Virus record (IMG/VR): IMGVR_UViG_3300021440_000013
Coordinates: 124,001-188,000 of that record
Strand: one strand, 5' to 3'
Length of the DNA: 64,000 nucleotides
Position 1 is the first letter of the stretch. Each line of letters begins with the position of its first letter. The notes under the pieces were generated by a model, which saw only the letters and a program-made list of their open reading frames with translations, did not search any database and had not been told where the DNA came from. Made by a program: the position numbers and the translations under genes. Below, in pieces: positions 13,751 through 57,822 of this stretch.

Positions 13751-15034
13751 ATGAGTCTGCATATCGTTCGTGTATCCGCTCTGCCGGATCCCCTGGTTGC
13801 CAACACCATCTACCTGCTGGCCGTCTCTGCCACTGAAGTCCAGGTCGTTACCGTTGGTAACAACATCAACAACCCGCGCAAGACCCAGCTCTCGAGCGAA
13901 GTCGCGACCCTGATCAACAACTCGGCGGCCAGCCTGACCGCTGATTACGACGCCAAGATCGCTGCCGCCGTTACCGCTGCCGGTGGTGACGTTGACGGCG
14001 CTTTGGCCGAAGCCAAGGCTTACACCGATACGGGTCTGGCTGCTGAAGTGGCCCGTGTCGATGCGAAGATCGCCGCTGACGACGCCGCTGGTCTGGCTGC
14101 TGCTAAGGCCTACACCGACGCCGAACTCACCGACGAAGTCACTCGCGTCGATGCCAAGATCGGTGCTGATGTGGCCGCTGAAGCTGCTCGCGCTGATGCT
14201 GCCCTGGCTGCTGGCGACTCCGCCACCCTGGACGCTGCCAAGCTCTACACCGACAACGAAGTGGGCGATGAAGCCACTCGCGTTGATGCCAAGATTGCTG
14301 CTGATGTGGCTAGCGAAGCTGCGCGTGCTGATGCTGCCCTGGCTGCTGGCGACTCCGCTACCCTGGCGGCTGCCAAGGTGTATGCTGATGGCCTGAGTAC
14401 CTCCGAAGTGGCCCGCGTGGATGCCGCTATCGCTGCTGGCGATGCTGCTACCCTGGCGGCTGGTAAGGCCTACACCGACTCCAGCGTTGCTGCTGAAGTC
14501 ACCCGTGTGGACGCCAAAATCGCTGCTGACATCGCTACTTCCGATGCCGCTGGTCAAACCGCGCTGAACAACGCCATCGCTGGTGAAGTGACTCGCGTCG
14601 ACACCAAGATCGCTAACGACGTTGCTGCCAACTCGGCGGCTGACCGTGCCTACACCGACGCTGCTGTTGCCGGTGAAGTGACCCGTGTCGATGCCAAAAT
14701 TGCTGCCGACATCTCTGGCGCAATCGGTAACCTGGACCTCTCCAACAGCGCCCAACTGGCTGCCAACATCGCTGAACGCGATGCCCTGGTCCTGACCAAG
14801 AACAGCTTCGTGCTGGTTTCTGACGCCACGGGCGACGCCACCGTTACCGCCGGCGCTGCGCTGTACTTCTACAACACGGGCGACAGCTCCTTCCTGAAGA
14901 TCGCTGAATACGAGTCCCTGGACATCGTGATTCCGAACAAGGCGATCCTGGAACAGTTCTCCGACGTCGGCGGCCAGCTCGCCTACAAGGGCGCACTGGT
15001 GGGCACCGTCCAAGAAGGCACCCACACCTGGTAA
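13751..15034 (+). CDS. Ala/Asp-rich repetitive coiled-coil fibre protein
   Basis: Many EVxRVDAKIAAD and AKAYTD repeats; globular N- and C-termini; strongly C-ending codon bias; SD AAGGA then ATG 13751. Confidence 0.75.
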   Translation: MSLHIVRVSALPDPLVANTIYLLAVSATEVQVVTVGNNINNPRKTQLSSEVATLINNSAASLTADYDAKIAAAVTAAGGDVDGALAEAKAYTDTGLAAEVARVDAKIAADDAAGLAAAKAYTDAELTDEVTRVDAKIGADVAAEAARADAALAAGDSATLDAAKLYTDNEVGDEATRVDAKIAADVASEAARADAALAAGDSATLAAAKVYADGLSTSEVARVDAAIAAGDAATLAAGKAYTDSSVAAEVTRVDAKIAADIATSDAAGQTALNNAIAGEVTRVDTKIANDVAANSAADRAYTDAAVAGEVTRVDAKIAADISGAIGNLDLSNSAQLAANIAERDALVLTKNSFVLVSDATGDATVTAGAALYFYNTGDSSFLKIAEYESLDIVIPNKAILEQFSDVGGQLAYKGALVGTVQEGTHTW

Positions 15035-15082
15035 GCTTGACTCAGCCGGGTTGATCTTGACCTAGCTGTTTGGCTAAGTGTT

Positions 15083-15112
15083 TAAGGGAGGAGGCTTCGG
15101 CCTCCTCCCTTA
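15083..15112. terminator. Hairpin with cUUCGg tetraloop
   Basis: TAAGGGAGGAGGC-ttcg-GCCTCCTCCCTTA. Confidence 0.7.
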
Positions 15113-15197
15113 TTAGTGTTAGTCATAAAACCAAACAGCAAATCGTCTGACTAGAGGTACATGTACATCTTCCCTAACAACCAATACTTTTTATAGG

Positions 15198-15956
15198 TTG
15201 ATCATGCCTAACTTACTGACCCGAACCCCGCTCGCTGCGCCGCAAGAACTCGCTGAACTCTATGTCGTTTGGGATCGTAAAGATTACCGAATGACGCTTG
15301 CCACACTTCTTTCTTTGGTGACTAAAGAGAAGCTGGGTCTGGGGAATGTTGAGAACACAGCTGATGCTGACAAGGCTATTAGCACTGCAACGCAGGTCGA
15401 ACTGGCTAAAAAAGCAGATGCCATCAGCGTCCCGACCAAAGAAGCATTTGACGCCTTGGCGGGTCAGCTTCAAGACTTTGTGTCGATCGATACGCTTAAC
15501 ACCGCTGTCGATGCGATCGTTAATCGTCTAAACGACTACACCACCAAGGTAGAGACAAACCAGGCCGTCTCAGCAGCACTCTCTCCAATCACGCTTGCGC
15601 TCTCGAACATCCAAAGCTCGATCCAAGCTCAGGAACAAGCGATTCAGAGCCTTCAAACTGCACAAGCGAATAACATCACGCTCACGCAGCTTAATGAAGG
15701 CCTGAGTCATCAAGCCGATGCGTTTAATCAGGGTTTGAACACCCTGGCTCAAGCAACCAGTGCGCAGATTACCGCCATCGGAAACCAGCTCACTGCATTC
15801 CAAACGGTCTTGACGAGCTTTGAGCTTCTTCTGAACGATAAAGCCGACCGGGTGCATCGTCATGCCATCGACGATATCGATGGCTTACGCCAGTATATCG
15901 AAGAGATCGCACTTATGGTTGAGCCGGAAGTTACCGCTAACGGCCATGAGTGGTAA
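15198..15956 (+). CDS. Fibre-like coiled-coil protein
   Basis: LGLGNVENTADADKAISTATQ fibre motif; long coiled coil; HRH motif; ends GHEW. Confidence 0.65.
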   Translation: MIMPNLLTRTPLAAPQELAELYVVWDRKDYRMTLATLLSLVTKEKLGLGNVENTADADKAISTATQVELAKKADAISVPTKEAFDALAGQLQDFVSIDTLNTAVDAIVNRLNDYTTKVETNQAVSAALSPITLALSNIQSSIQAQEQAIQSLQTAQANNITLTQLNEGLSHQADAFNQGLNTLAQATSAQITAIGNQLTAFQTVLTSFELLLNDKADRVHRHAIDDIDGLRQYIEEIALMVEPEVTANGHEW

Positions 15957-15983
15957 GTGCGTACTTAATCTAAGGAGATAGAG

Positions 15984-16559
15984 ATGTCCGAGATTAAGCG
16001 CGTCACTACCCTACCCACTACACTGGGTATGGGCGATATATTGATCCTAAAGGAAAATGAGACCGTCTCCCTGGCTGTGGTGGATCAGAGTGCCACCAAG
16101 GCGTATCGTCTAGGCGAGCGGGTGTGTCTGAGTGGTCCTTCGTCGATCTTTCATAAACAGGAAGGGCTGTGGCTTATTCAGGGCTACACGGACCGGGAGA
16201 CCTACCAGTGTGCATCAAACGATGGCACAGTGTGGCAGGAGGGTGCGTATATCCACTTTGTGGTGAGTAACACGGCGCTATCGACCGCGTCTTTCACGGT
16301 CAATGAGCGCGTCTTTACGATCGCGCTCATGCCGGTTAGTGTTTCCCCACCCGTTATCGATGCCCCCACGGCCAACGCCATTAACGTAGCGGTGAGTGGG
16401 GCGCGAGTGATCGCCTCGGCCTTTACGCTAAACGACACTACGAGCGTGGATAGTCACGCCTCAACCGACTGGGAAGTGGCCACCGACAGTAACTTCACAA
16501 CGATCGTGGCTTCGAGCTATGCTGACAAGGACAACCTTGTTGCATGGACGATCCCTTAA
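15984..16559 (+). CDS. Fibre-associated protein with partial FN3/Ig-like module
   Basis: SD AAGGAG; HASTDWEVATDSNF module shared with the genes at 16579 and 18362. Confidence 0.65.
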   Translation: MSEIKRVTTLPTTLGMGDILILKENETVSLAVVDQSATKAYRLGERVCLSGPSSIFHKQEGLWLIQGYTDRETYQCASNDGTVWQEGAYIHFVVSNTALSTASFTVNERVFTIALMPVSVSPPVIDAPTANAINVAVSGARVIASAFTLNDTTSVDSHASTDWEVATDSNFTTIVASSYADKDNLVAWTIP

Positions 16560-16578
16560 CGTTTAAGGAGATAACGCC

Positions 16579-17163
16579 ATGGGCGCTGTACTCACAGCAG
16601 AGATTTTAACGAATGGTCAGTTAAAACTGACCACCACTAACCTCTTAGGCCAGACCGTTCAGTTGTCCTTAGGTGAAAAGATTAAGAGCGAAAACGCACT
16701 TAACTGGGAAGTGGTGGTGGGGCTTAATGCGATATTCAAGGTCACGAATCATCACTTTACCGATCTTTACACGGTCAGTACGACAAACGGTACGGTGAGT
16801 GTCACTGACGGGGTGATCACCTACATCCCGTCAACCATCGGTCAAGGCGGCTTTATCATTAACGGCCAGAAAGTTAATGTGACGGTCGTTCAGGATAAGG
16901 TTGGAAAACCCAACGTTATCTTGCCTAAGAACCAGAGCACGGGAGTGAGTCGTTACGTTGAGGCGGCTTCGAGTGATTTTAAGGTCCAGAACACCACGAT
17001 CACACACGCGTATTCACGTTGGCAGGTGGCCAGTGACGCAAGCTTCATACAGATCATTTATGACGGAGCCGATGTGTCTAACCTTACTCGACTTAAGCTG
17101 CCCAAGCTTAAAAATGGTCAAAAGTATTACGTACGTATTCAGCACTTTGGGAAAAAACCATAA
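16579..17163 (+). CDS. Fibre-associated protein with FN3/Ig-like module
   Basis: SD AAGGAG; HAYSRWQVASDASF...LKNGQKYYVRIQH. Confidence 0.65.
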   Translation: MGAVLTAEILTNGQLKLTTTNLLGQTVQLSLGEKIKSENALNWEVVVGLNAIFKVTNHHFTDLYTVSTTNGTVSVTDGVITYIPSTIGQGGFIINGQKVNVTVVQDKVGKPNVILPKNQSTGVSRYVEAASSDFKVQNTTITHAYSRWQVASDASFIQIIYDGADVSNLTRLKLPKLKNGQKYYVRIQHFGKKP

Positions 17164-17170
17164 GCGCTTG

Positions 17171-17205
17171 ACAAGGAGATGGGTGTTAAGCCCATCTCCT
17201 TGTTT
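17171..17205 (+). terminator. Hairpin terminator
   Basis: ACAAGGAGATGGG...CCCATCTCCTTGT-TT. Confidence 0.65.
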
Positions 17206-17254
17206 GGTGTGAATAGAAATCTCATGGACTACATTCTTTTAAGGAGAATCAACG

Positions 17255-18349: not shown

Positions 18350-18361
18350 GAGAGGTGTATC

Positions 18362-20272
18362 TTGACGCGTAGAAATAGTCTTATTAGCGATGGCCAAAGC
18401 ATCGTTGGGGGTGCACGCATCACCCAAGGTGGCACCGGCGCAAGTTCTTCTCAGGTGGCATTGAGTAACCTAGGAGGTGTGTCGGTCGATCTAATCGATC
18501 ACGCACTTGGACCCATTCCACTTGATGAACACGGATTACCTTCGCCCTCGATTTTTACAGGGATCTCAGTGATTGACACCGCCATTGACGGCGAGCGTTT
18601 TATCGGGATTCGTGAAACCAAAGAGTATTTCATTACGACTTTTGATGCGTTTTTAAAGTACGTCGTGGAAGCTATCGATGGTGAAGTCGAAATAGAGGGT
18701 CATGTCATCCGCTACACGGCACCCTATCGCACCGGAAGCTCAGGTTTCACAGTCAATGGGCGTCTAATCTCCATCGCTGTAACTGGCGTAACGGTCGGAG
18801 AGCCCAGCATCACTTCGCCGACTGAGAATGCCGATAACCGTCCTTTGAGCCTCAGTGTTTTGTCGAGTCCGTTTTCCTTTAAGGGAGAAACGGACTCTCA
18901 TAAATCAACCGACTGGGAAGTCTCACTTGACAGAGGTTTTGGAACACTCTCTGCCTCAAGTTACAACGACACGTTCCACTTAACGTTCTGGGAAATCATG
19001 GCTCTTAAAGAACTTACTACGCACTATGTGCGCTGTCGCTATCGCAGCCAGAGCGGCTCGGTGAGCGCGTGGTCAAACCCCAGGTCTTTTAAGACCGGGA
19101 ACGACGGTTTGATTAACAATGAAAACCAAGTGATCCCTAACCCAACGGGGCTGCCTAATCAGTTCTTTGGCTGGCATGCTGTCTATGATGGTACGGGTAA
19201 TACACTCTACATCACCAGCGACCGTAAACCACGAAACGGGCTTCAAAATGTAGGAGCGGTTTTTGTTTATAAGCGTGACTCGGCAGGTCTGTGGGCGTAT
19301 TTGACGGAGATCAACATCCCTTCTGCCGATTTAGCCGCTAACGCTTATTTTGGAAACTCGATCTCAGTGAGTGCCGATGGGGCTCATTTGGTTGTGGGCA
19401 CTTACTATGCTAGTGGTGCGGATGGGCGTGTGTACTATTTCACGCGCAGTGGCGACGTATGGACCCACCAGCAAACACTTTATCCTCCAGTTAGAAACAC
19501 TGACGAATATTTTAGTTATTACAAAATAACTCTAAGTTCGGATGGAAACGAACTTATCGTGGGTTCCATTTACTATGAAGATTCTGCGGTAGTCAATACC
19601 GGCTGTATCTATCAATATCTGAGAAGTGGGGCGACATGGGCGCTAAACGCCCAGATTAAAAACAACCACCCCAAGATGGAAAATAACGATAACCTTGGGC
19701 ACTATCAGGCTATGTCGACCGACCGCCAACATCTTTTGGTGGCGGCTATTTGTGGCAACTACAGCGGACAGACAAAAAGCGGGTATGTCAACTACTACAC
19801 TAAGAGCGGCAATAACTGGGTCTATCAAAGCAGGATTGAACGGAGTGACCTTCCATTAGCGGCGATGTTTGGACACACGTTATCGATGAGTGCCGATGGC
19901 ACTCGCGCGGTTATCTTTGCACCCTTAGTAAAAAAAGCGTATATTTATTTGCGCTCCGGTGTAACCTGGACGCTTGAAAAAGAACTGGTAGACACCAACA
20001 CTAAGGCCTTCATCTCGGGGCGTGTTAATATTTCTAGTGACGGATTGACGGCATATTTTTCGACGGCGTATTCGGATTACCCCGGTGTACTCTACATCTA
20101 CAGTAGAAGTTCTGGTTCGTGGGTGCTTACCAAGACTCTCACCCCAGTTAATTCTTTTAACGGCGATCTTTTTGGCCGAAGCACCATTGCCATTCATCCA
20201 TCTCTTCAGGAGATTGCGGTAGCCTCGCTTGGGGGAAGTGGAAACATCGGCTCCGTTTCAATCTTCTCTTAA
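18362..20272 (+). CDS. Putative receptor-binding protein: FN3 module plus FG-GAP-like beta-propeller
   Basis: About 6 repeats of FG-x-S-x-S-x-DG...G-x-VY-x-Y-x-RSG-x-x-W; HKSTDWEVSLD FN3-like module; TTG start after GAGAGG. Confidence 0.75.
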   Translation: MTRRNSLISDGQSIVGGARITQGGTGASSSQVALSNLGGVSVDLIDHALGPIPLDEHGLPSPSIFTGISVIDTAIDGERFIGIRETKEYFITTFDAFLKYVVEAIDGEVEIEGHVIRYTAPYRTGSSGFTVNGRLISIAVTGVTVGEPSITSPTENADNRPLSLSVLSSPFSFKGETDSHKSTDWEVSLDRGFGTLSASSYNDTFHLTFWEIMALKELTTHYVRCRYRSQSGSVSAWSNPRSFKTGNDGLINNENQVIPNPTGLPNQFFGWHAVYDGTGNTLYITSDRKPRNGLQNVGAVFVYKRDSAGLWAYLTEINIPSADLAANAYFGNSISVSADGAHLVVGTYYASGADGRVYYFTRSGDVWTHQQTLYPPVRNTDEYFSYYKITLSSDGNELIVGSIYYEDSAVVNTGCIYQYLRSGATWALNAQIKNNHPKMENNDNLGHYQAMSTDRQHLLVAAICGNYSGQTKSGYVNYYTKSGNNWVYQSRIERSDLPLAAMFGHTLSMSADGTRAVIFAPLVKKAYIYLRSGVTWTLEKELVDTNTKAFISGRVNISSDGLTAYFSTAYSDYPGVLYIYSRSSGSWVLTKTLTPVNSFNGDLFGRSTIAIHPSLQEIAVASLGGSGNIGSVSIFS

Positions 20273-20279
20273 AAAACAC

Positions 20280-20311
20280 CCACAGGAAGGGCCTTATAGC
20301 CCTTCCTGTGG
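20280..20311. terminator. Bidirectional hairpin between convergent genes
   Basis: CCACAGGAAGGGC...GCCCTTCCTGTGG. Confidence 0.7.
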
Positions 20312-20316
20312 TCTCT

Positions 20317-21156: not shown

Positions 21157-21178
21157 GTTTAGTTGCACCAAGAAAGTG

Positions 21179-21245
21179 GATGGGGTTCAATCGGAGATGG
21201 GGTTCAATCGGAGATGGGGTTCAATCGGAGATGGGGTTCAATGGA
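21179..21245. repeat. 17-bp tandem repeat GATGGGGTTCAATCGGA x4 (4th copy lacks one C)
   Basis: Copies start at 21179, 21196, 21213 and 21230; no spacers. Confidence 0.95.
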
Positions 21246-21317
21246 TGAGGAACTCTGCAAAGAAAAGAAACCGTAGGCACACCAATTGAGTAGACCACTC
21301 TTAACGTATACGTCAAA

Positions 21318-23816: not shown

Positions 23817-23962
23817 GGTGTGGACGATGGATGAACCCGTCAGTGATTTCAACCCCTTGATGAAGAGAGCGCTTAGTTACCTTCTATAAACGACTTTACG
23901 GTTGAGATGTGGATCTATCAGGACAGTTCAGTTAAGGGTGGTGTAGTTAAAAAGTAGATAGA

Positions 23963-23994
23963 CTGCACGACGGGCTTTAAAGCCCGTCGTGCAG
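23963..23994. terminator. Bidirectional hairpin between convergent genes
   Basis: CTGCACGACGGGCTT...AAGCCCGTCGTGCAG. Confidence 0.7.
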
Positions 23995-23999
23995 ATGTG

Positions 24000-39427: not shown

Positions 39428-42400
39428 TTACATCGTTCTTCGCATATCAAGGGCGGATGAGCCAGACTTATCCTTGCGACCCAGGTTGATTCTGTCCTGT
39501 TCTTTCGGAGAAGCTTTTTCATCGCCTGCTTTAGCAGCCTTAGTGGTGGCACTTACAACCGTAGCCATCATCTCAGCCACCTTTTCAACCTTGACATTAC
39601 TCAGGATCTCACGCAGCACTACCAACGATTCTTGTTGGATACCAACAGATTTGTCTAGCGCTGTACTTAATGACCCAAATCCAGCGGCCATGCCTTCGCC
39701 CGACTCAGTGCGTCCGGTGCTAACGACCCCCGGTGTGCGGTTGTCTAAGAAAAGCCCAGAGCTAGAACTCTTAGGTTCTGGCGCCTTCTTTTGCCCCGCT
39801 GCGGGTCCGGCATTAGCAACCGCTGCTTTTTGAGCCGATACCTTTTCACCTGCCATCGGTGTACTGATCGGACTCTGAGCTGGATCGATATCAAGACCAG
39901 GTCCTTTACTTGGCGCCGCGGAGAGACCTAGCGAGCCAGTGGGTGCTTTGACACCGTAGCGGCTTGATTTCTCATTAAGCTTGGCGCTTAAGTTATCGTA
40001 GACCTGTTTAACGGTGAGGGGTTTACCATCTTTGTAAAAGATGTTTTGATTCTTCGAGGCCGGGCCTGGAAAACGATTCGCTGCAATCGCGTCAGGCGGC
40101 ATGGAAAGAAATGCTTTTGCGCCACTGGCCCCTAAGAAATGCGCCAGGTAAAGGTCAGTCAAATTTGGATTTGACTTGACCGGTGCGATGACTTTCTTAT
40201 TCTCCTTAATGTATTCAGCGGCCATCAAACTTGACGCTTCAACACTAAACGGAGACGCCGTCTTCTCTAAGCCATACTTAGAAGAATACTTAGAAACCAT
40301 CGAATCCCAGGTTGACCGAATGAACTGAAAGAGTCCCGCGGCGGAGCTTGTTGAAGCTTTGGCTTGGGGATTCATGTCTGATTCAACCGCAGCAAACGCC
40401 TGCATGAGAGCCGGGTCCTCACCTGCACGTTTGGCGTGCGATGCGATCTGGGCTTTGATGTCGCCACTTGCGCCATTTTCAGCGCTGGCGGTAGTTGCTT
40501 TCCCGCCGGTGGAGGCGGGTTTCTCTTCAGCGTCAGGTGGAGGAAGATCGTTGGTCGTTGAGTTAGCGGCAGCGGTATTTTGCGCCATTGACAGTTTAGC
40601 ATCTTTGGAAGGAGGCGTTCCTGCTTTGGCGTTTTGATCCGAGGCTTTCTTAACCGCAACGGCAGTATCGACCGTGTTGGTCGAAGTCGTTTCAGCTTTT
40701 ACCGCTTCGCTAAATTTAGGCGGAGGGAGCACCTGATCTTTTGCGGTTTGCTGTAGATTAGACGCTACGGGCGAGGGCGGGGCATTGAGTAGACCCAGTG
40801 CAACGTCTTTGTTACGCCGACCCTTTGCGCTGTTAGCCATGCTACCGTATCCGGCGCCACCACGCATGACACCCGCGCTGATCATGGCGTCTCGCAACTG
40901 ACCATTAGTTTTCGCTTCCGAAGGGTTCTTTTGGATCCCTGCGGGCTCTACGTGCCAAGGTTCTTGCCCCACGGGTCTGGTGAAACCATACTTCTTCATC
41001 AAGCCCAGTTTGTCAAGCTCGTCAGCGATCTTTGAATCGATGTCGAGCGCTAAACCAAACTCATGAAGCGAGTTGCCTGGCGCCGCAGCTCTATCGCCAT
41101 ACTTACGCTTCATCTCGACTTGTTCTTCGTAGGTGCGTACACCCGAAGTGACAAGGATGCTCTTGCCTGTATTCTTTCCATACTCCTCAGCCATCCCTAA
41201 GAAGAGCTTGAGCATGGTTGGATTAAGGCTATCGATGTTGATACCCTTTTTCTCAAACTTAACGAACTGGCGACCTGCTGTACCCTCCAAGGGTGCGCCT
41301 GGCGCCATCGCGACTTTACCCGCTCCGCCTACAAGACTCTTTTCTTCACTGCCTTGCTCGCGCGCTGTGGTGCTGGCTGGTGCCGCACCACCATCTTCAC
41401 TCTGGGTGGCCGTCTGTACCTGGGCTTTATTCTGCTCAGCGTTCTTACGGCGCTCCTCTTCGACCTTCGCTTTTTGAGCTTGGTCGATCTGACTCTCTTT
41501 TTCTTTGTCTTTAAAGACGCCGAAGGTGAGTTTGTCAAAGAGCGTTTTAGCAACCGATGTCGCGGTTGTTTCACCGAGCTTTGCAGGAGGCAGCGTTGCT
41601 TTGGTGTCTTTCGGTTTATCCGCTTTCGCCTTAGCGATCAACGCTTCGATGCTGTCCTTGACAAACTTGTTGTCCAAAGAGAGCTGGCTTAATGCTTTAA
41701 CCGGAGAGGTGTCTTCATCATAGGGGCCACTTTCAAAACCAACGAGTTCGAGATACTTGATCCGATCGTCCGGTTTAAACTTAGCCACCTCTTTGAGCTT
41801 GGCTTTGTTATTGACCGCATAGAGCGCGGTCATGTGTGTCAAGAAGAATGGCTTAAAGCGTTTATCGAACCAACGGCTAAACTTCTCGCCTTGCTCAGTA
41901 TCTTCCTTGTCAATCTTAAAGAGCTCAAGGAGTTCTTCAGATTTGACTTTCTTATCATTGATATAGGCTTTACCGTTATCGTAACCGACACGCCCATCTT
42001 CAAGATACGCTTCCAACATGAACGGGTAGTAGTTATACTGATCCACGCTCTGATTGTAACCAAAGCCATATTGGTTTAAGCGGATGCGTTCAAACTCATC
42101 CGCGTTGTTACGCGTCGCGTATTGGTAGAGTTTATAAAGTCCATAGCCGGCACCTGCTATCGCTGCCGCACCTAAAATCACTGGGCTGCTGATCACGGAA
42201 GCAACGGCCCCTATTGCACCACCGGCTACGTTTAACGCACCCATGGCAAGGCCAGGTAGGGCGCGTGTCAACGCAAAGCGCCCTAGTCCTAATGCACCCT
42301 TGCCGGCAAGCTTAGCGGCACCCCACGCGCCTTTACCAGCAAGCTTGGCTACGCCTCCCACTCCCTTAACCAGTGCACCTGGCGTCATCGCGAGAAGTTT

Positions 42401-45400
42401 ACCCGCTAAACCCATCACGCCGCCAAGACCTTTAGTGATCAAGGAGAAGAGTCCACCAAAGCCCGTCATCGCCATTTTGAGGCCATTTCCAAGCAAATCC
42501 ATCAGTCCTGTACCGCCCTTATAGCGTGCGGTCAGATCTGCTTGAGCGCCTTCTTTTTGGCGAGATGCTTTGAGTTCAGCTAACTTTTCTTCACGCTCTT
42601 CAATACTTCCGTCACGTGTACCACTTCCATCGGTGTCGTTCCAAGCACGCTTGGCCGAATCGATCTTTTGCTTAACACGTTTAAGAAGAGAAGGTTTCTT
42701 TTCAACTTGAGGTTGATTTTCGGGTGTGGCTGCCGCAGCACCTTTTTCTCCACCCTTTAAAAACCCGCCAATACTACTTGCAAGTCCACCCGCCATAGCG
42801 GCACCGGTCCCTAATAGACCGCGTGCCTTACCCTGCGCTAACTTAAAGCGACTTGGTTTGGCAGGACCCATCTGGTCTGGAAGTCTAGGCCCCACGAAAT
42901 CACCTGGACTCTGAGCCTTAGGGGTCGACCAACTCGGTTGCTTGAATCGATCCTTGGCAGCTTGAATCATCGCATCGATACGGTCCTGATACGTCTCGTT
43001 GGGTTGTAAGTCCGATATCCCTCTGTCAATCGCATCTTTTTGTCGAGCACCGGGATATATCGGTCCAACAAACTCATCTGGTCTCTGGGTCTTGGTAGCG
43101 GTGTGTTTTGTTTTTAGCGCGCTGTACTGGTATTTGGCTTTATTGAACAAGCCTTTCTTTTTGTCACCCGGCTGCATCGGACCCACAAAGTCTTCCGGTG
43201 TTCTACCCAAAAGCTTGTCTCCGAGTTCGCGTCCCTTGCCTTTTAGGTCAGTGAAGTTTTCTTTATTCTTAAAGAAATCCATTCCACGAGAGAGAAGTGA
43301 GCCTGAGCTTGTTCCGATTGCAGCAGTGCTGACTCCAGGCTGCATCGGACCCACAAAGTCCTTTGCGACCTCTTCACTGACAGCACCACCTTTACCAAAA
43401 CCAAAGAAACCCTTGATCTTGTTCTTGAGCTCTGCGGTCTTTTCTTTGATCTCAGCCGACTTGATGGCTACTTCGTCCTTAGCTTCCTTTAAAACCTCGT
43501 TCAGGTTCTTAGGCGCTTTGTCGACAGGACCGCCAGGCGGCGTTACCTTGAGCTTGGCAGATTCACGCTTCTTAATGCGTTTTAACACATTCACACGCTG
43601 GTTAAGCATGATGTCGCGGATATCGAGCAAGACCTCGTAAGTATCCTTGGCGTATTTATTTTCACCAAAGTTGATACCAAACTGACCCCAGTCGGTGGGT
43701 TGATCCCACCACTCTTTGATCTTTCCACCCATTGAGAGCGACTTATCGGTCAGGACATTAAATCCTTTTCTAGCTTTATCTCCTACCCACGCAGCCGCCT
43801 TGGTCGCTAGACGGATGACGTTGGTGACGTTTCCACGGATCTTATCACCATAGCGATCATAGAGACCCTTGGAGCGTTCTTCAAGACTCAGGATGATGTT
43901 ACCCACCGAGTCAACGATATCGCCCTTAGCCTTATTGAGCTTATCCATCGTGTCAAGCACTTCGCCCGTGACCGCGTCACGATAAAAACCCGCCTTGAGT
44001 TTAACGGCACGAATAACGGGTTCTACGCCATCAGGCAAGTACAGGTCTTTGGCTTCATTAAGCTTATCCCCAACCCAACCAAAGACTTTACTCACCTTGT
44101 CTTTGATGAACTTTAAACCATTGGGAAGTCCTTCGGTTAGAAAAGACTTCGCGCTATCGAAGACGGTGCTTGAAAAAGATGCTGCTTTTTCATAGAGCGT
44201 GCTAAACGCTTTACGCGTACCGCTCTCTTTATCGGTGAGTTGGTCTTTAAGAAAGTCTTTTGCTGAGGTGAAAAGACCCTTGGCTTTCTCGGTTTTCTCA
44301 CCCGGTGTAAAGAATTCTTTAAGCGCCTCGATTGTGCTTGAACCGGCTTTAAATCCTAGGTCCATCGTGCCGCGCATGATCGAAGTAATCATGCCGCGGA
44401 AAGTGCCATCGTGAACAAGTTGGTTTGGAATAAAGCCACCCGCACCCTGGCCACCGCTTTGCACAAGCTCACTGGCCAGCTTTTGCTGTTCGGTAAGCAG
44501 CTTTACCGTGTCAGCGGTATCTTTTTGGATCTTAGCGAGGAGCTCGTTGGTGAGCTCCTCTGCGCTCTTACCCTTGGTACGGTGACGTGAAGAGCTCTTG
44601 GGTGTGGTTTCCGGCGGTGCGGCGTCACGTTTAAAAAGACCTTCGACCTTCTCACCCAAATGTTGAATGGAAGCCATCAAGGCGCCATTCATACTTTGCA
44701 GATCGATCATCTTGCCCTTTGGTGCAACCTCTTCACCTAGGTTCTTACGCACCTCCTGAGCCATGGGTCCTGAGTGCTCTTGATCATCGCCCTTACCCGC
44801 CTGATAGTTCCAGTTAAAGAGCTTGGTCTTTTTAATACCTTCGTAGGCTTCCCTTGGATTAAAACGCTTAACCTTGTCAAAGAAACCCTCTTCTTTGTCG
44901 GGTTTAGACTTCTGTCCAAAGTAGCGTGCCGCCAAGTCTTTATAATCCTGACTCCCAGGCGCACCCTTAAAGCGATCACTGACCGCCTGGAGGAGTTCTT
45001 TTGGGTTAAGCTCTTTGATCGCTTCTTTAACGTTGATGTCCGAACGAATAAAGGCGCTGTCTTCCATGAACTTGGCGTAAGCTTCTTCATCGATGTCGTA
45101 CTTGCCGTCATCACGCTTTTTCGCTAAACCTTTCTTAGCGATTAGATCGCCATAGCCCGCCTTTTCAAACCCAGCGATGGTTTTATCAGACGAAGGTGTC
45201 CTCTTACGGATGTCCTTGATGGCTTTAGTCAGTGTGTTAGCATCGCGGTTTTTAGTATCGCTTTGCTCGCTTGAGCGAAGCTTATATTCAATTAAGTCTT
45301 GGAGTTCATCTGAGAGCTGTCCGAACGAAGGGGACGAGAGGATCGAATCAGGATCAAGTGGGTTATTACTATCCCGACTCAGCCTTGATAAGAATCGTTT

Positions 45401-47038
45401 AAGCTCGATGATTTGGTCTTCGTCGAGGTTTTCATTTTCGGTAAAGAGTTCGACGGCTTTTTCGACTATGTAGTTATAGCCGGATCTCTGGATATGGGAG
45501 GCAAGGTCTTTTTCAACCCGCGCCCCCATGTCCGTTTCACTGGTGAATTCCTTACGCTTAAAATCGTATACCTGCCGGTCGGCTTGATTTCGCCCGGTTC
45601 TTAACATGACGATTTCGCGGTGAATGTTCGCCAGGTGCCCAGGGATAATGTCGGTTAGACTGATGTGTGCTTTGGCATCAAAACCCATCGTAGGGTTATC
45701 GAGCTCATCGAGATTCGTCTCAGAACCAATACTTCGACCCGGATCCCTGTCCGTGAAGTTATCCATGAGCATGTCAAGGGCACGGAAGAACTTACCCTTA
45801 GCACCAACCTCGTTGGTTTTGTCAACCCAGTTTTGAGACTGCCTTAGTTTCTCGATAGCGCCTGCTGGGTTGTTAGCAATATTGGCAAGGCCGGCAAACT
45901 TCTCCTGGATGACCGAGTCATCACCACCGATCTGTTTGATCCGTTTAGCCATCACGTCGCGAAACCATTCCGCGATGTTGGCACCCGCCGTTGCGCCAAG
46001 CATCTCGGCTTTTGACATGGGTTCCATACCCATGTCAACCATCGATGCGTTCATTCCATCCAGCATCTCTTTAGCGTCAATGGCGCTGTCAAGCTGCATG
46101 TCGGCCGTATCGAGCGCCGAAGTAAAGCCAGAAACTGTCTGACGCGCAGTTTCTTTAAGGCGGTCCATACCTTTTTTCAGGAAGGACTTATCGCCATAGA
46201 GCGACTCAATAAACTTTTTCTTACTGACTTCTTTAAAGCGCTCGCTTTCGGTGATCTTTACGTACTCTGGCATCGCGGTGTTTTTAACCACCGCTTCCAG
46301 TTGCGTTTGGAAAACTTTGAAACTGGCCTGAGCTTTTGAGAAGTGTTCTTTTTGTGCAAGCAGCGAACGAATCTGAAGTTCAAGCGACTTGCGTTGAAAG
46401 CGCTGGTTGGTGTTAACCGTATATTGCGTCTGAATGGAGAGGCTACGCTCCATCGAGCGTTGCAGATCGAAGTTGGCATTAAAGCGCTTAGCACCGATGC
46501 GGTCTCGAATCAGGTCTTTGGCGTTATCGAGCTTACCTTGTTCTTGCTGCTGCTCAAAGACCCCTGCAAGCGACATCGCTACCGCTTGTTCTTCTTGGTT
46601 AGGGACTGTGTTCTGCTCACCACCGATGTCTATGCCACCCCAGCGTGCGATTTTCTCAGTCAGGCTTTTAAGGCGCTTAGCACTCTCTGGAACAAGCTGG
46701 TTAATCTTGGCGGTAACACGCCCGACACGGGGCTTTATTTCTCTTACCGTCTCATCGTATAGTTCGTACATCCCGGTGGTGAGCTCACCGGTTGCATCTG
46801 CCACTTCCCCGTAGCTATCAGGGAGCGTTTTGCGAAGGGTGTCCTTTACAAACTCTGGGCTAACCACCGCGTCTTTAACGCCAGACACGGTACCCATAAA
46901 GACGTTGCCAATGACACCACGCGCTTTTTTCTTACCCGTGGCTTCCTGATTAAGCTCGCCATCAATTTCATTCTCGAAGTCGAAATTAAAATCTGTATCA
47001 AACTCCGGAATATCCGAAACCAGCTCCTTCTTGGCCAT
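39428..47038 (-). CDS. Giant tail-associated peptidoglycan hydrolase / tape-measure-like protein (phiKZ gp181-like) with S74-like, M15-peptidase and SLT domains
   Basis: SLT: AAVES..NP...SSAAGLFQF...W, YLAHFLG. M15: TSGVRT..EQ...APGNSLHEFGLALDI...EPWHVE. S74-like: SDINVKE...GPMAQEV. SD GGAGG then ATG 47038. Confidence 0.85.
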   Translation of the reverse strand: MAKKELVSDIPEFDTDFNFDFENEIDGELNQEATGKKKARGVIGNVFMGTVSGVKDAVVSPEFVKDTLRKTLPDSYGEVADATGELTTGMYELYDETVREIKPRVGRVTAKINQLVPESAKRLKSLTEKIARWGGIDIGGEQNTVPNQEEQAVAMSLAGVFEQQQEQGKLDNAKDLIRDRIGAKRFNANFDLQRSMERSLSIQTQYTVNTNQRFQRKSLELQIRSLLAQKEHFSKAQASFKVFQTQLEAVVKNTAMPEYVKITESERFKEVSKKKFIESLYGDKSFLKKGMDRLKETARQTVSGFTSALDTADMQLDSAIDAKEMLDGMNASMVDMGMEPMSKAEMLGATAGANIAEWFRDVMAKRIKQIGGDDSVIQEKFAGLANIANNPAGAIEKLRQSQNWVDKTNEVGAKGKFFRALDMLMDNFTDRDPGRSIGSETNLDELDNPTMGFDAKAHISLTDIIPGHLANIHREIVMLRTGRNQADRQVYDFKRKEFTSETDMGARVEKDLASHIQRSGYNYIVEKAVELFTENENLDEDQIIELKRFLSRLSRDSNNPLDPDSILSSPSFGQLSDELQDLIEYKLRSSEQSDTKNRDANTLTKAIKDIRKRTPSSDKTIAGFEKAGYGDLIAKKGLAKKRDDGKYDIDEEAYAKFMEDSAFIRSDINVKEAIKELNPKELLQAVSDRFKGAPGSQDYKDLAARYFGQKSKPDKEEGFFDKVKRFNPREAYEGIKKTKLFNWNYQAGKGDDQEHSGPMAQEVRKNLGEEVAPKGKMIDLQSMNGALMASIQHLGEKVEGLFKRDAAPPETTPKSSSRHRTKGKSAEELTNELLAKIQKDTADTVKLLTEQQKLASELVQSGGQGAGGFIPNQLVHDGTFRGMITSIMRGTMDLGFKAGSSTIEALKEFFTPGEKTEKAKGLFTSAKDFLKDQLTDKESGTRKAFSTLYEKAASFSSTVFDSAKSFLTEGLPNGLKFIKDKVSKVFGWVGDKLNEAKDLYLPDGVEPVIRAVKLKAGFYRDAVTGEVLDTMDKLNKAKGDIVDSVGNIILSLEERSKGLYDRYGDKIRGNVTNVIRLATKAAAWVGDKARKGFNVLTDKSLSMGGKIKEWWDQPTDWGQFGINFGENKYAKDTYEVLLDIRDIMLNQRVNVLKRIKKRESAKLKVTPPGGPVDKAPKNLNEVLKEAKDEVAIKSAEIKEKTAELKNKIKGFFGFGKGGAVSEEVAKDFVGPMQPGVSTAAIGTSSGSLLSRGMDFFKNKENFTDLKGKGRELGDKLLGRTPEDFVGPMQPGDKKKGLFNKAKYQYSALKTKHTATKTQRPDEFVGPIYPGARQKDAIDRGISDLQPNETYQDRIDAMIQAAKDRFKQPSWSTPKAQSPGDFVGPRLPDQMGPAKPSRFKLAQGKARGLLGTGAAMAGGLASSIGGFLKGGEKGAAAATPENQPQVEKKPSLLKRVKQKIDSAKRAWNDTDGSGTRDGSIEEREEKLAELKASRQKEGAQADLTARYKGGTGLMDLLGNGLKMAMTGFGGLFSLITKGLGGVMGLAGKLLAMTPGALVKGVGGVAKLAGKGAWGAAKLAGKGALGLGRFALTRALPGLAMGALNVAGGAIGAVASVISSPVILGAAAIAGAGYGLYKLYQYATRNNADEFERIRLNQYGFGYNQSVDQYNYYPFMLEAYLEDGRVGYDNGKAYINDKKVKSEELLELFKIDKEDTEQGEKFSRWFDKRFKPFFLTHMTALYAVNNKAKLKEVAKFKPDDRIKYLELVGFESGPYDEDTSPVKALSQLSLDNKFVKDSIEALIAKAKADKPKDTKATLPPAKLGETTATSVAKTLFDKLTFGVFKDKEKESQIDQAQKAKVEEERRKNAEQNKAQVQTATQSEDGGAAPASTTAREQGSEEKSLVGGAGKVAMAPGAPLEGTAGRQFVKFEKKGINIDSLNPTMLKLFLGMAEEYGKNTGKSILVTSGVRTYEEQVEMKRKYGDRAAAPGNSLHEFGLALDIDSKIADELDKLGLMKKYGFTRPVGQEPWHVEPAGIQKNPSEAKTNGQLRDAMISAGVMRGGAGYGSMANSAKGRRNKDVALGLLNAPPSPVASNLQQTAKDQVLPPPKFSEAVKAETTSTNTVDTAVAVKKASDQNAKAGTPPSKDAKLSMAQNTAAANSTTNDLPPPDAEEKPASTGGKATTASAENGASGDIKAQIASHAKRAGEDPALMQAFAAVESDMNPQAKASTSSAAGLFQFIRSTWDSMVSKYSSKYGLEKTASPFSVEASSLMAAEYIKENKKVIAPVKSNPNLTDLYLAHFLGASGAKAFLSMPPDAIAANRFPGPASKNQNIFYKDGKPLTVKQVYDNLSAKLNEKSSRYGVKAPTGSLGLSAAPSKGPGLDIDPAQSPISTPMAGEKVSAQKAAVANAGPAAGQKKAPEPKSSSSGLFLDNRTPGVVSTGRTESGEGMAAGFGSLSTALDKSVGIQQESLVVLREILSNVKVEKVAEMMATVVSATTKAAKAGDEKASPKEQDRINLGRKDKSGSSALDMRRTM

Positions 47039-47089
47039 TTTTAGATAGCCTCCCATAATGTAAAGTTTAGCATCCAAAGGATCTTCGCT

Positions 47090-49116: not shown

Positions 49117-49131
49117 GGAAAAGTGGTTAAA

Positions 49132-49662: not shown

Positions 49663-49665
49663 ATT

Positions 49666-54027: not shown

Positions 54028-54031
54028 AACC

Positions 54032-54065
54032 TAGACTAGGATGGGCCTAAACCCATCCTAGTCTA
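54032..54065. terminator. Intergenic 14-bp hairpin (no U-tract)
   Basis: TAGACTAGGATGGG...CCCATCCTAGTCTA. Confidence 0.55.
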
Positions 54066-54148
54066 AATCTGATGAAGACTGCGCTTATCTATTTAAGAAA
54101 GGCGTACTTGAACCCTGTTTTATTTCTTTAAAATGGAGAGATGCTAAA

Positions 54149-54349
54149 ATGGCAACTGTTAATGAGAAAACGCATGAGACGGCCTTGATCCTGGCCAACG
54201 TCGGTGCTGTCGCAACTGGTATCGTTAAAAAGATCAGCGGCAACGATATCAGCACTGCGGTAAATGGCTCGCCGGTGACGGCCGAACTGATCCAGAACCT
54301 GGTTTATCGCCGTGTGGCTATCGCGGCTGAAAAAGAACTCAACGCCTAA
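54149..54349 (+). CDS. Small hypothetical protein
   Basis: SD GGAG; 66 aa; followed by the SD of the next gene. Confidence 0.65.
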   Translation: MATVNEKTHETALILANVGAVATGIVKKISGNDISTAVNGSPVTAELIQNLVYRRVAIAAEKELNA

Positions 54350-54367
54350 AAGAAGGAGCATCAAGAC

Positions 54368-55870: not shown

Positions 55871-56586
55871 TGAAACTCATCCGTAACGCCGGGAAGGTTC
55901 TTAACGCACTAACGGATCTTCCCGGTAAACCCGTTATCGCCAAGGAGGCGATCACGATCCAGCTTCCAGTGCGCTTTAAAGAAGTGGATCTCTGTAAGAT
56001 AGGTGAGCAGACCTATGCTTATGGGCTATTTGTGATGATCCTTGACTCTGGGGATTACGCGCTCATGAACGTGAACGCGTATCTTGAGCTAGGTCCGTCA
56101 CACGTCGAAATCTCAAAAGTCGATGAGACGGAGTATTACAACTTTCGTTTTGAGGCAGGCGATGTGCTCTTTAGGACTAAGGAGCTCGTGTGCCGGGCTA
56201 ACCTGATCTATAAGGCTATCGAGGAGTTTGTCTTCAAAGGTAAGGCGCCGTGGTACGTTGAATATGAAGACATGGGTAAGATCTTCGATACCGCCAAGCA
56301 TCACGCGAAAACCACCGCAAACATCATGCCAACGGTCGTGGAGTTTATGGCGGCTTATATTGCGCGAAAGAAAGACGATCGAGTGAAGTTTATTCGAGAA
56401 GGCGCAGAGAGCTACGATGATTTTACACGCAAATATCTTGAATGGGTGCCTATGCGTAGCGTCTATTGGTCAGCACCTGGCACCGTTAATAAACTAGCAG
56501 GCGCCTACTTCTCAGACGGTGTCGTGAGTGCGTTGGTTAATCCAAGCACTAAGACCGAGAATATCGAGGGTATCTTGAGGGCTTAA
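55870..56586 (+). CDS. Conserved hypothetical protein (phiKZ gp176-like position)
   Basis: Translationally coupled (TAATG); KLAGAYFSDG...IEGILRA C-terminus. Confidence 0.65.
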   Translation: MKLIRNAGKVLNALTDLPGKPVIAKEAITIQLPVRFKEVDLCKIGEQTYAYGLFVMILDSGDYALMNVNAYLELGPSHVEISKVDETEYYNFRFEAGDVLFRTKELVCRANLIYKAIEEFVFKGKAPWYVEYEDMGKIFDTAKHHAKTTANIMPTVVEFMAAYIARKKDDRVKFIREGAESYDDFTRKYLEWVPMRSVYWSAPGTVNKLAGAYFSDGVVSALVNPSTKTENIEGILRA

Positions 56587-57354
56587 ATGATGAACGGAAA
56601 AGTTTACTTCACGGCAACGAAGTTGTCGATCTTTAAAAAGGAAGGTAAGTTACTTCCTGATGAAAACGGCTACTACGAACTGGTGGTAGGTGGGCTTAAT
56701 ACCTACAACAACACTGGGGCGTGGTATTACACCATCGAGGGCGTGCGGGAACTCTTTGGTCCAGGCAGCATCTTGCACCGACGTATCGCCAATGGTTGTC
56801 TTAGGGCGGAAGTGAATCACCCTAAGCAAAAGCCAGGTGAGTCCGCCGAAGCATTCTTTAATCGGATGCTTGACATCGATCTCAATAACACCTGCGCTCA
56901 CTTTAAGGAAATCTGGCTTGATGAGGAGTTCGGTAAGAAGAACCCTCAGTACAAGAACCCGAACCTGGTGGCGATCATGGCGAAGGTGAAGCCAGCGGGC
57001 CCCAAGGGCCAGATGCTTCAAGAATCGCTTGATAACCCCAGTGAGAATGTCTGCTTCAGTATCCGTGCTCTGGCTGATGAGGGCTATGTTGGTGGTAAGC
57101 GTCTGAGGGTATTAAAGGAAGTCGTCACCATCGATTACGTCAATGAAGGTGGAATCGTGGTCGCCTCCAAGTGGGATTCTCCCGCCATGGAAAGCATCGA
57201 TGACAGCGCACTTCTTGAGATCACACTTAAGACCATTGAGAAAGCTAAGGTAGGTGAATCATGTCTTGCTACCGAGGCTTCTCGTGAACTCGTTGAGTAT
57301 GTAGAAAAGAAGTATTTCAAAGCGACAAAACCCGCGGTCTGGGCAAACTGGTGA
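56587..57354 (+). CDS. Prohead (head maturation) protease (phiKZ gp175-like)
   Basis: His RAEVNHP, Ser CFSIRA, Asp TIDYV; C-terminal self-cleavage-type sites AME and ATE. Confidence 0.85.
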   Translation: MMNGKVYFTATKLSIFKKEGKLLPDENGYYELVVGGLNTYNNTGAWYYTIEGVRELFGPGSILHRRIANGCLRAEVNHPKQKPGESAEAFFNRMLDIDLNNTCAHFKEIWLDEEFGKKNPQYKNPNLVAIMAKVKPAGPKGQMLQESLDNPSENVCFSIRALADEGYVGGKRLRVLKEVVTIDYVNEGGIVVASKWDSPAMESIDDSALLEITLKTIEKAKVGESCLATEASRELVEYVEKKYFKATKPAVWANW

Positions 57355-57387
57355 TGATGTGGAGTGACCTAACGTCACTCCACATCA
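57355..57387. terminator. Intergenic hairpin
   Basis: TGATGTGGAGTGAC...GTCACTCCACATCA, T-rich stretch nearby. Confidence 0.6.
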
Positions 57388-57420
57388 CGCTGCTCTTTTT
57401 AACTTTACCGGGATAACCCT

Positions 57421-57822
57421 ATGAGTGCGCTCACGATTGTTCGTGTTAATGCGCTTCCGCTCCAAACGGAAGCGAACACGCTCTATCTCGTAAAGAAAAC
57501 GGATACCTTATTCGATCTTTACGTCACAAGTTCTGACGGACTCTCTGTTCGTCACGTTGCAACCCAAGAAGACGTTCTTACCCAAAGCGTTCTCTTTTCT
57601 CAAACGCCACCTGCTCTTCCACAGGCTTCCCGTTTGTGGTGGAACACGGTCGAAGGTGTTCTTTACATTCAGTACGATGATGGCGATAGCGTAAACTGGG
57701 TTGAAGCTAATCCTGCTCCTCTTTACCCGGAATTTGGTGGTACGGGCTCATCGAACACGATGGCGCGTGCTGATCACAACCACGACGAGACGTATGTCAC
57801 GATCGGCATCCATCAGTGGTGA
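57421..57822 (+). CDS. Small fibre-related protein
   Basis: N-terminus matches the 13751 protein; LWWNT..G.LY..YDDGDS..WV and ARADHNH fibre motifs; ends GIHQW. Confidence 0.65.
   Translation: MSALTIVRVNALPLQTEANTLYLVKKTDTLFDLYVTSSDGLSVRHVATQEDVLTQSVLFSQTPPALPQASRLWWNTVEGVLYIQYDDGDSVNWVEANPAPLYPEFGGTGSSNTMARADHNHDETYVTIGIHQW

What the first reader, a model, noticed from the sequence alone, without database searches (positions are those of the whole stretch)
13751..57822. Shared terminal tags on fibre proteins from two distant clusters (C-terminal H-x-W-stop; N-terminal RVxxLP motif)
Seen: three otherwise different proteins end in VQEGTHTW* (13751-15034), VTANGHEW* (15198-15956) and VTIGIHQW* (57421-57822). 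Three begin with the same motif: MSLHIVRVSALP..LVANTIYLL (13751), MSALTIVRVNALP..TEANTLYLV (57421), and more weakly MSEIKRVTTLP..LGMGDILIL (15984). Inference: these could be head-to-tail docking modules (an N-terminal socket binding a C-terminal HxW peptide) that let fibre subunits polymerise or branch into long filaments, or a common virion-attachment tag. Either would link the 13-16 kb and 57-63 kb clusters into one assembly system.
Basis: partly seen in the sequence, partly recalled or inferred. Interest (0 to 1): 0.6.

Follow-up and report, generated by a model that had tools for sequence, protein, structure and literature searches.

The report
Trp-ended tails and shared fibre heads
Tail-fibre proteins of this jumbo phage carry two widespread, undescribed end modules, a 48-residue N-terminal domain and a short tail ending in an invariant tryptophan, and across many phages a tail-bearing gene sits directly before a head-bearing gene, which suggests a plug-and-socket joint between fibre parts.

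Summary
Only three of about 228 proteins in the 216.9-kb phiKZ-like genome end in H-x-W (0.06 expected), and all three are fibre-module proteins.

The His is not conserved, but the terminal Trp is. It is invariant in all 42 relatives of the first protein, all 15 of the second and all 5 of the third. The general motif is x-[EDNQ]-W-COOH, and W-x5-W-COOH in most other phages.

The N-terminal motif is a true 48-residue beta domain. It matches 1549 protein clusters, almost always at residues 1-50, on fibres 45-1755 aa long. It has no Pfam family and no solved homologue. It is present in 13751, 57421 and, by profile-profile comparison, 15984, but not in 15198.

In 64 IMG/VR loci, 81 of 85 distinct N-domain genes lie directly after a gene whose product ends in Trp. 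Those upstream partners fall in at least 10 unrelated families.

Fused single-chain versions lack both the Trp and the second N-domain at the junction. My best reading (about 0.45) is a directional plug-and-socket relay between fibre parts. The main rival (0.3) is an anchor domain plus a trimer cap. No structure prediction supports either. Long filaments are not supported.

The parts
13751..15034 (+). Fibre protein P0001 (427 aa). It belongs to the phrog_7946-like family and carries a long Ala-rich repeat rod inserted after the N-domain.
   Evidence: phrog_7946 E 1.7e-20 over residues 302-398. Forty-two short relatives all end in W. The orthologue in L014 is only 161 aa and has no rod.
13751..13894 (+). 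N-terminal domain of P0001 (residues 1-48).
   Evidence: Domain profile E 2.4e-18. Alignment A2 has an invariant Pro and Tyr. The AF2 model of the short relative shows four strands at pLDDT above 90.
14012..14710 (+). Ala-rich repeat rod: about 7 repeats of 30-45 aa, including a 135-bp tandem DNA repeat at 14099-14377.
   Evidence: The rod is absent from the 161-209 aa relatives.
14729..14926 (+). Alpha/beta middle domain of P0001, a possible trimerisation unit.
   Evidence: Matches the phrog_7946 core. Weak fold resemblance, Z about 5, to collagen XV/XVIII trimerisation domains and tailspike neck domains.
15008..15031 (+). C-terminal tail of P0001 (last 8 residues, ends in Trp; stop codon 15032-15034).
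   Evidence: The terminal W is invariant in 35 aligned relatives. This stretch has low confidence in the monomer model.
15204..15956 (+). Fibre protein P0002 (250 aa from the ATG at 15204). It has its own N-terminus, a coiled coil, an HRH motif at 15855-15863 and a Trp tail at 15930-15953.
   Evidence: All 15 orthologues end in W, with or without His. The N-terminus is not the N-domain (hhalign probability 1%). Tail-fibre PHROG and PTR hits.
15984..16559 (+). P0004 (191 aa). It has a divergent N-domain at 15990-16097 and no Trp tail. It lies directly downstream of the Trp-ended P0002.
   Evidence: hhalign probability 96.4%, E 1e-9 against the domain profile. Orthologues in L018 and L021 hit the profile directly. 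The order P0002 orthologue then P0004 orthologue is conserved in L014, L018 and L021.
57421..57822 (+). P0003 (133 aa). N-domain at 57421-57564, a fibre-head middle domain at 57586-57711, an HNH motif at 57775-57783 and a Trp tail at 57796-57819.
   Evidence: Domain profile E 5e-22. Orthologues keep D-H-x-H and the final W but not the His at position -3. In the AF2 model residues 1-97 are confident and 102-133 are below pLDDT 50. The model resembles the N-terminal parts of viral fibre proteins.
57829..58950 (+). 373-aa fibre protein directly downstream of P0003. The pair is conserved in the relative.
   Evidence: Tail-fibre PHROGs. The L003 gene pair 5995-6405 and 6420-6836 matches. Its N-terminus is not the N-domain.
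12957..13493 (+). 178-aa protein ending in LEW, directly upstream of P0001. It may be only a lineage-specific coincidence.
   Evidence: Its orthologues in L003 and L021 do not end in W.
56587..57354 (+). Head maturation protease ending in W, directly upstream of P0003.
   Evidence: phrog_3014. The orthologue in the relative also ends in W but is not followed by an N-domain gene.

Best explanation
The proteins are components of the tail-fibre apparatus of a divergent phiKZ-like jumbo phage. They are built from exchangeable modules, two of which sit at the chain ends.

1. A 48-residue four-stranded N-terminal domain, followed by a helix.
2. A short tail, unstructured in the monomer, whose last residue is always Trp.

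I propose that the tail of one fibre component inserts into the (probably trimeric) N-terminal domain of the next component. This would give a directional relay: a tail-only base piece, then a head-plus-tail adaptor, then a head-only distal fibre or receptor binder.

In the window the conserved pair is 15204-15956 (tail) followed by 15984-16559 (head). 13751-15034 and 57421-57822 carry both modules and would act as adaptors.

Shown: the modules, their conservation, the gene-order rule and the fused variants. Inferred: the physical contact, the trimeric state and the position in the virion.
For: - The terminal W is invariant in three otherwise different families: 42/42, 15/15 and 5/5 found relatives, plus the orthologues in L003.
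- Over 107 W-ended relatives, position -2 is E, D, N or Q in 92, and His at -3 occurs in only 10.
- The N-domain profile finds 1549 clusters at E<=1e-3, almost all at residues 1-50. They sit on proteins carrying collagen, PTR, FG-GAP and tail-fibre modules.
- In 64 IMG/VR loci, 81 of 85 distinct N-domain genes have a W-ended ORF stopping within -120 to +45 nt of their start.
- Of the 65 upstream partners that lack the domain, 61 end in W, and they fall in at least 10 BLAST-unrelated clusters.
- The background rate of W-ended genes elsewhere in the same loci is about 1%.
- The same pattern appears in Pseudomonas phages Ostro and JBD68, Microcystis phage Ma-LMM01 and five Logan/ENA contigs.
- Single-chain versions (P0194, P0196, P0097) have neither the W nor a second N-domain at the junction, as expected if the pair replaces a peptide bond.
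- Tails placed before the two N-domain classes differ. Position -2 is Asn in 33/35 before one class and in 0/42 before the other. Adaptors carry a class-1 head with a class-2 tail.
- The tails are disordered in monomer models.
Against: - No interaction has been predicted or measured.
- The gene-order evidence comes mostly from one N-domain subfamily in related prophages, so the number of independent events is far below 81. The tail-class correlation is confounded by family.
- In this phage's own lineage the rule is patchy. The genes upstream of the 13751 and 57421 orthologues do not end in W in L003, L014, L018 or L021.
- The Trp tails of 13751 and 57421 are followed by genes without the N-domain.
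- N-domain proteins with no W-ended neighbour exist: P0174 in L020, the 720-aa protein in L021, and G000 82665-83489.
- The paralogous N-domains within this genome are only about 31% identical.
- Fold matches for the N-domain are insignificant, with Z at most 4.1.
Confidence: 0.45

Rival explanations
1. The two modules are independent. The N-domain is a generic start or anchor of trimeric fibres that binds the baseplate or another virion protein. The Trp tail is a minimal C-terminal cap or registration element of the protein's own trimer (six Trp in W-x5-W tails), comparable to a foldon. Adjacency would then only reflect conserved fibre gene cassettes.
For: - The tail occurs on proteins without the N-domain (15204-15956 and the small upstream proteins), and the N-domain occurs without the tail.
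- The W disappears when more chain follows, as expected of a terminal cap.
- The tail sits after trimer-type elements: a collagen-like stretch in the Ostro 63-aa protein, coiled coils, HxH motifs and a beta hairpin.
- The middle domain weakly resembles trimerisation domains.
- Low monomer confidence fits a segment that folds only in the oligomer.
- The rule is patchy in the jumbo-phage lineage.
Against: - It does not explain why about 95% of sampled N-domain genes are directly preceded by a W-ended gene from at least 10 unrelated families.
- It does not explain why the last, head-only protein of a chain lacks the tail.
- It does not explain why fused versions lose the tail and the second head together.
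Confidence: 0.3
2. The Trp tail is a short recognition tag for a third partner shared by fibre components, such as an assembly chaperone, a baseplate socket or a host surface glycan. The N-domain would serve another purpose.
For: - An invariant residue at the exact C-terminus of unrelated proteins behaves like a short linear motif.
- W-ended proteins cluster in fibre modules.
- The head protease of this phage and of its relative also ends in W without an N-domain neighbour.
Against: - No candidate partner is conserved across the very different phages that carry the tail (jumbo myophage-like genomes, 40-50 kb prophages, Ma-LMM01).
- Receptor-binding tips are normally variable, not invariant.
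- The only element found to co-occur consistently is the N-domain of the next gene.
Confidence: 0.15
3. The shared endings are coincidence or a by-product of DNA signals at gene boundaries, such as a ribosome-binding site or a recombination linker.
For: The stop of a tail gene is often only 4-30 nt from the next start.
Against: - 0.056 H-x-W endings are expected against 3 seen.
- Trp has a single codon and is invariant while the flanking codons vary.
- In the window the gaps are 170 nt (15034 to 15204) and 27 nt, which is too variable for a fixed signal.
- Conservation lies at the protein level.
Confidence: 0.02

Closest known systems
Phage JBD30 baseplate: the hub protein C-terminus docks in the trimeric N-terminal 'thigh' domain of the receptor-binding protein gp54 (PMC11445458)
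   Same: A C-terminal end of one tail protein is inserted into the centre of a trimeric N-terminal domain built from a helix bundle with peripheral beta sheets. The model here has a beta domain followed by a helix.
   Different: There is no sequence relation. The fold match is insignificant (8rk3 chain a, Z 3.4). The JBD30 joint is one fixed hub-to-binder contact, whereas here the modules recur on successive small proteins.
T4 long tail fibre joints (gp34-gp35-gp36-gp37) and the head-to-tail garland of gp12 (textbook knowledge)
   Same: Different fibre proteins, encoded by neighbouring genes, are joined end to end non-covalently.
   Different: The T4 joints have no shared terminal tag. None of the proteins here matches T4 fibre families.
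Shared N-terminal anchor domains of multiple tailspikes (CBA120 TSP1-4, G7C gp63.1/gp66, Klebsiella phage K64-1; from my own knowledge)
   Same: A conserved N-terminal module carries variable distal parts and allows branching or exchange of receptor binders.
   Different: Those anchors bind each other through folded domains, not through a C-terminal Trp peptide. The N-domains within this genome are only about 31% identical.
phrog_7946 (PHROG family of unknown function)
   Same: 13751-15034 matches its core (E 1.7e-20). The short relatives match it from end to end.
   Different: The window protein has a rod of about 240 aa inserted. 57421 and 15204 are not members. The family has no assigned function or structure.
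Terminal trimerisation units: T4 fibritin foldon and the collagen XV/XVIII trimerisation domain
   Same: Small elements at the end of a fibrous trimer. The middle domain aligns with the collagen XVIII and XV domains at Z 5.3 and 4.9. A beta hairpin precedes the tail.
   Different: The scores are below significance. The 8-residue tail itself is much shorter than a foldon.
HxH metal sites of trimeric phage fibres (T4 gp37 and gp12; from my own knowledge)
   Same: HRH in 15204-15956. D-H-x-H is invariant in the 57421 family. HxH occurs in most short relatives.
   Different: 13751-15034 and its closest relatives lack HxH yet keep the Trp, so the two features are separable. Metal binding was not tested.

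Membership tests
   57421 at E 5e-22 and 13751 at E 2e-18. 15984 through its orthologue profile, hhalign probability 96.4%. Not met by 15204 (probability 1%) or by 57829 (0.2%).
phrog_7946-like family | Alpha/beta middle domain matching the PHROG profile | tested here: met
   13751-15034 residues 302-398 match profile positions 35-132 at E 1.7e-20. 15204 and 57421 give no hit.
phrog_7946-like family | Protein ends in Trp | tested here: met
   All 42 relatives found end in W. It is an invariant column in alignment A1.
Plug-and-socket relay (proposed here) | A W-ended gene lies directly upstream of an N-domain gene | tested here: met
   Met in the window for 15204 to 15984, 12957 to 13751 and 56587 to 57421. 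Only the first pair is conserved in relatives. The general rule holds in 81 of 85 cases.
Plug-and-socket relay (proposed here) | Physical contact between the tail and the N-domain | tested here: inconclusive
   One prediction job gave no verdict, which counts neither for nor against. Trimer-level modelling could not be run.
JBD30-type C-terminus-in-trimer docking | N-terminal domain with the fold of the gp54 thigh domain | tested here: inconclusive
   VIA-align Z 3.4 to 8rk3 chain a, within the noise range.
Mtd_N (PF18454) | Pfam profile match | tested here: not met
   No Pfam hit on any of the four proteins. The only leads are an Atlas feature score of 0.89 and Z 2.7 to 1yu0.
HxH metal-binding fibre segment | Conserved His-x-His on the trimer axis binding a metal ion | not testable with these tools
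   The motif is present in 15204-15956 and 57421-57822 and absent from 13751-15034. Metal binding needs a structure or an experiment.
Foldon / multiplexin trimerisation domains | Significant fold match | tested here: inconclusive
   Z 5.3 and 4.9 over 51-53 residues, below the tool's stated noise level of 7-8.

The most novel reading that the evidence does not exclude
The Trp tail (W-x5-W-COOH, or x-[EDNQ]-W-COOH) and the 48-residue N-terminal domain form a general, portable plug-and-socket connector. Very different phages, from 40-kb prophages to jumbo phages, would use it to string fibre parts together and to swap receptor binders. Tail and socket classes would set the order of assembly and prevent self-polymerisation.
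Probability: 0.4. Interest if true: 0.75.

Novelty: new variant of a known kind. Interest (0 to 1): 0.6.

Why it matters
Phage host range is set by fibres whose distal parts are exchanged between phages, and how the parts are joined is known for only a few model phages.

A short terminal tag and a small socket domain recur on more than a thousand protein clusters. If they do pair, they would give three things:
- a rule for annotating fibre modules that are now labelled 'hypothetical';
- a way to predict which proteins sit next to each other in a virion;
- a compact handle for attaching foreign receptor binders in phage and tailocin engineering.

Even if the docking idea fails, two results stand. 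The N-domain is a large family that Pfam and the PDB do not cover. The invariant C-terminal Trp is a clean feature that can be tested by mutation.

Tried and rejected
- Complex prediction of the P0001 tail (residues 388-427) with the P0003 N-domain returned 'no answer' (score 0.01, partner poorly folded). It is not evidence either way.
- PDB sequence searches with P0001, P0003 and the Ostro homologue found nothing relevant.
- Foldseek against the PDB gave no match at E<=0.001. VIA-align gave only Z<=5.3.
- DNA-level search of the phage collection found only a 170-bp patch, at 70% identity, in Pseudomonas prophage-like phages.
- H-x-W as the motif is rejected because the His is variable.
- The N-termini of 15204 and 57829 as cryptic N-domains are rejected by hhalign.
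- The full N-domain alignment was too diverse for a collection scan. Scans for the jumbo-phage type of N-domain and for the P0003 type gave only 2 and 1 loci. The gene-order statistics therefore rest on one subfamily.
- I considered that the tail reflects a ribosome-binding site or a recombination linker, and rejected it because the spacing varies and conservation is at the protein level.
- I considered that the phiKZ-type head protease trims the tail after Glu, and set it aside because the tail also occurs in small siphophage-like genomes.
- F-type pyocin fibre papers were read for a precedent and none applied.
- Literature searches for a terminal Trp in phage fibres found nothing.


Full report
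**Context.** The window is bases 124001-188000 of a single 216,876-bp contig with 48.6% G+C.
- It encodes split RNA polymerase beta subunits, a phiKZ-type head protease and virion proteins typical of phiKZ-like jumbo phages.
- The nearest cultured phages share only about 41% identity in an RNA polymerase piece, so this is a divergent, uncultured lineage.
- The genes at 13.7-20.3 kb and 57.4-63.1 kb carry tail-fibre, minor-tail, FG-GAP and lectin-type matches.

**The observation.**
- Among 228 crude genes of the whole genome they are the only three ending H-x-W, against 0.056 expected. Only seven products end in W at all.
- A profile of the N-terminal motif hits 57421 and 13751 strongly and 15984 weakly.
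- 15198-15956 has a different N-terminus and probably starts at 15204.

**What is conserved.**
- Orthologues of 57421 (50-75% identical) end in HQW, HQW, VDW and AEW, and the copy in the 210-kb relative ends in MEW.
- All 15 orthologues of 15204-15956 end in W, preceded by HE, ND, SD, HF, NY or NF.
- A search with the C-terminal 128 residues of 13751-15034 found 42 proteins of 72-209 aa. Every one ends in W, and the final W is an invariant alignment column.
- Over 107 W-ended relatives, position -2 is E, D, N or Q in 92, and His at -3 occurs in 10.
- The conserved feature is therefore the C-terminal Trp preceded by a polar or acidic residue. His is only one of several residues allowed at -3.

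**Architecture.**
- 13751-15034 is a member of the family PHROGs calls phrog_7946, of unknown function. It carries about 240 residues of Ala-rich repeats inserted after the N-domain. A jumbo-phage relative has the same gene at 161 aa without the rod.
- The AF2 model of such a short member (pLDDT 87) shows a four-stranded N-domain (1-46), a helix (48-60), an alpha/beta domain (61-126), a hairpin (137-146) and a low-confidence last dozen residues.
- The alpha/beta domain resembles collagen XV/XVIII trimerisation domains and tailspike neck domains only weakly, at Z about 5.
- 57421-57822 models as the N-domain plus a second small domain common at the start of cyanophage and other fibres. Its last 32 residues, including the invariant D-H-x-H and the W, are disordered in the monomer.
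- No solved structure matches by sequence or convincingly by fold.

**The N-domain is a large family.**
- An exhaustive profile search found 1549 cluster representatives at E<=1e-3 and 100 at E<=1e-10. Nearly all matches lie at residues 1-50, on proteins of 45-1755 aa.
- The long ones continue into collagen repeats, PTR repeats, FG-GAP propellers and tail-fibre PHROG modules.
- Pfam has no model for it.
- Of the top 145 hits, 56 end in W. This includes 14 of the 96 that lack the phrog_7946 middle domain, among them proteins of 329-505 aa with quite different middles.
- The N-domains of 13751 and 57421 are only 31% identical to each other, while each is 60-75% identical to its own orthologues. 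They are therefore old paralogues, not copies kept identical to share one docking site.

**The gene-order rule.** Inspecting neighbours gave an unexpected regularity.
- In Pseudomonas phages Ostro and JBD68 a 63-aa protein ending in W precedes the 186-aa head-plus-tail protein. That protein precedes a 93-aa head-only protein.
- Ma-LMM01 and five metagenomic contigs show the same order. Two collagen-type head-only fibres are preceded by small W-ended proteins.
- The upstream partners share nothing detectable except the last eight residues, usually W-x5-W.
- A scan of IMG/VR with one N-domain subfamily gave 64 loci. In 81 of 85 distinct N-domain genes the ORF that stops within -120 to +45 nt of the start ends in W.
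- Of the 65 upstream partners without an N-domain, 61 end in W, and they form at least 10 BLAST-unrelated clusters.
- Elsewhere in these loci about 1% of genes end in W.
- Tails that precede the two N-domain classes differ. Position -2 is Asn in 33 of 35 before one class and in none of 42 before the other. The adaptors carry a class-1 head and a class-2 tail. This last correlation is confounded by family membership.

**Fused variants.**
- P0194 (820 aa) runs from the N-domain through the phrog_7946 module directly into PTR repeats. It then continues into a domain like 16579-17163 and an FG-GAP propeller like 18362-20272.
- At the junction there is neither a Trp nor a second N-domain.
- P0196 has the same kind of internal junction and ends its chain with a Trp tail.
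- So tail plus next head behaves like the non-covalent equivalent of a peptide bond.

**Interpretation.**
- The most economical reading is that the Trp tail of one component plugs into the N-domain of the next, giving a short directional chain of different proteins.
- A solved precedent for this kind of joint exists in JBD30. There the hub protein's C-terminus sits in the centre of the trimeric N-terminal domain of the receptor-binding protein (PMC11445458).
In the 210-kb relative the orthologues of 57421, 57829, 13751 and 15204 are contiguous.

**Limits.**
- Contact is inferred from genome context only, and the single complex job gave no verdict.
- The statistics come mainly from related prophages of one subfamily. 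Scans for the jumbo-phage type returned too few loci.
- In the jumbo-phage lineage only the pair 15204 to 15984 is kept in L014, L018 and L021.
- The W-ended genes upstream of 13751 and 57421 in this genome are not W-ended neighbours in relatives. The protease keeps its terminal W in the relative without an N-domain neighbour.
- The tails of 13751 and 57421 are followed by genes without the N-domain.
- A fourth N-domain protein at G000 82665-83489 has no W-ended neighbour.
- The main rival, an anchor domain plus a self-capping Trp tail, explains several of these exceptions and cannot be excluded.

**Verdict.**
- The modules themselves are undescribed in Pfam, PHROG annotation and the PDB.
- I class the finding as a new variant of a known kind, namely non-covalent joints between phage fibre parts.

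Noticed in passing
G000 80509-86198 (outside the window, about 38-43 kb upstream of it): A fourth N-domain protein (82665-83489, 274 aa, no Trp tail) sits in a non-structural region. It lies between two paralogous ORFs of about 390 aa (80509-81690 and 85047-86198) whose C-terminal Cys pairs look like IS605-type TnpB/OrfB. The family assignment was not tested.
   Followed up: partly
window 56587-57354; L090 1498-2250 (minus strand): The head maturation protease ends in W here and in the 210-kb relative (which ends H-S-W). In the relative no N-domain gene follows it. Whether the protease's terminal Trp has a role is open.
   Followed up: partly
window 16579-17163 and 18362-20272; protein P0194: An 820-aa metagenomic protein fuses, in one chain, modules that this phage encodes as separate neighbouring genes: the N-domain family core, PTR repeats, a domain like 16579-17163 and an FG-GAP propeller like 18362-20272.
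   Followed up: partly
window 58960-61912: Six consecutive small genes (138-198 aa) look like two alternating paralogue types. They give only weak matches to a virion structural PHROG (phrog_3758). A 406-aa lectin-type (Laminin_G_3) protein follows at 61927-63147.
   Followed up: no
window 13736-15025 (minus strand): A 429-aa antisense ORF mirrors the Ala-rich repeat region of 13751-15034. It is most likely a shadow frame of the repeats and not a gene.
   Followed up: no
L002 3390-3632 (Microcystis phage Ma-LMM01, downstream of gp040): An unannotated ORF of about 80 aa carries a partial N-domain directly after the W-ended gp040. gp039 also ends in W.
   Followed up: partly
window 39428-47077 (minus strand): A very large ORF of 2549 aa, which I did not examine.
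   Followed up: no
L003 2929-5877: The relative has a 982-aa protein and a 138-aa head-only N-domain protein (2027-2443) in the fibre cluster. Both are missing from the corresponding place in the window, so the fibre set differs between the two phages.
   Followed up: no
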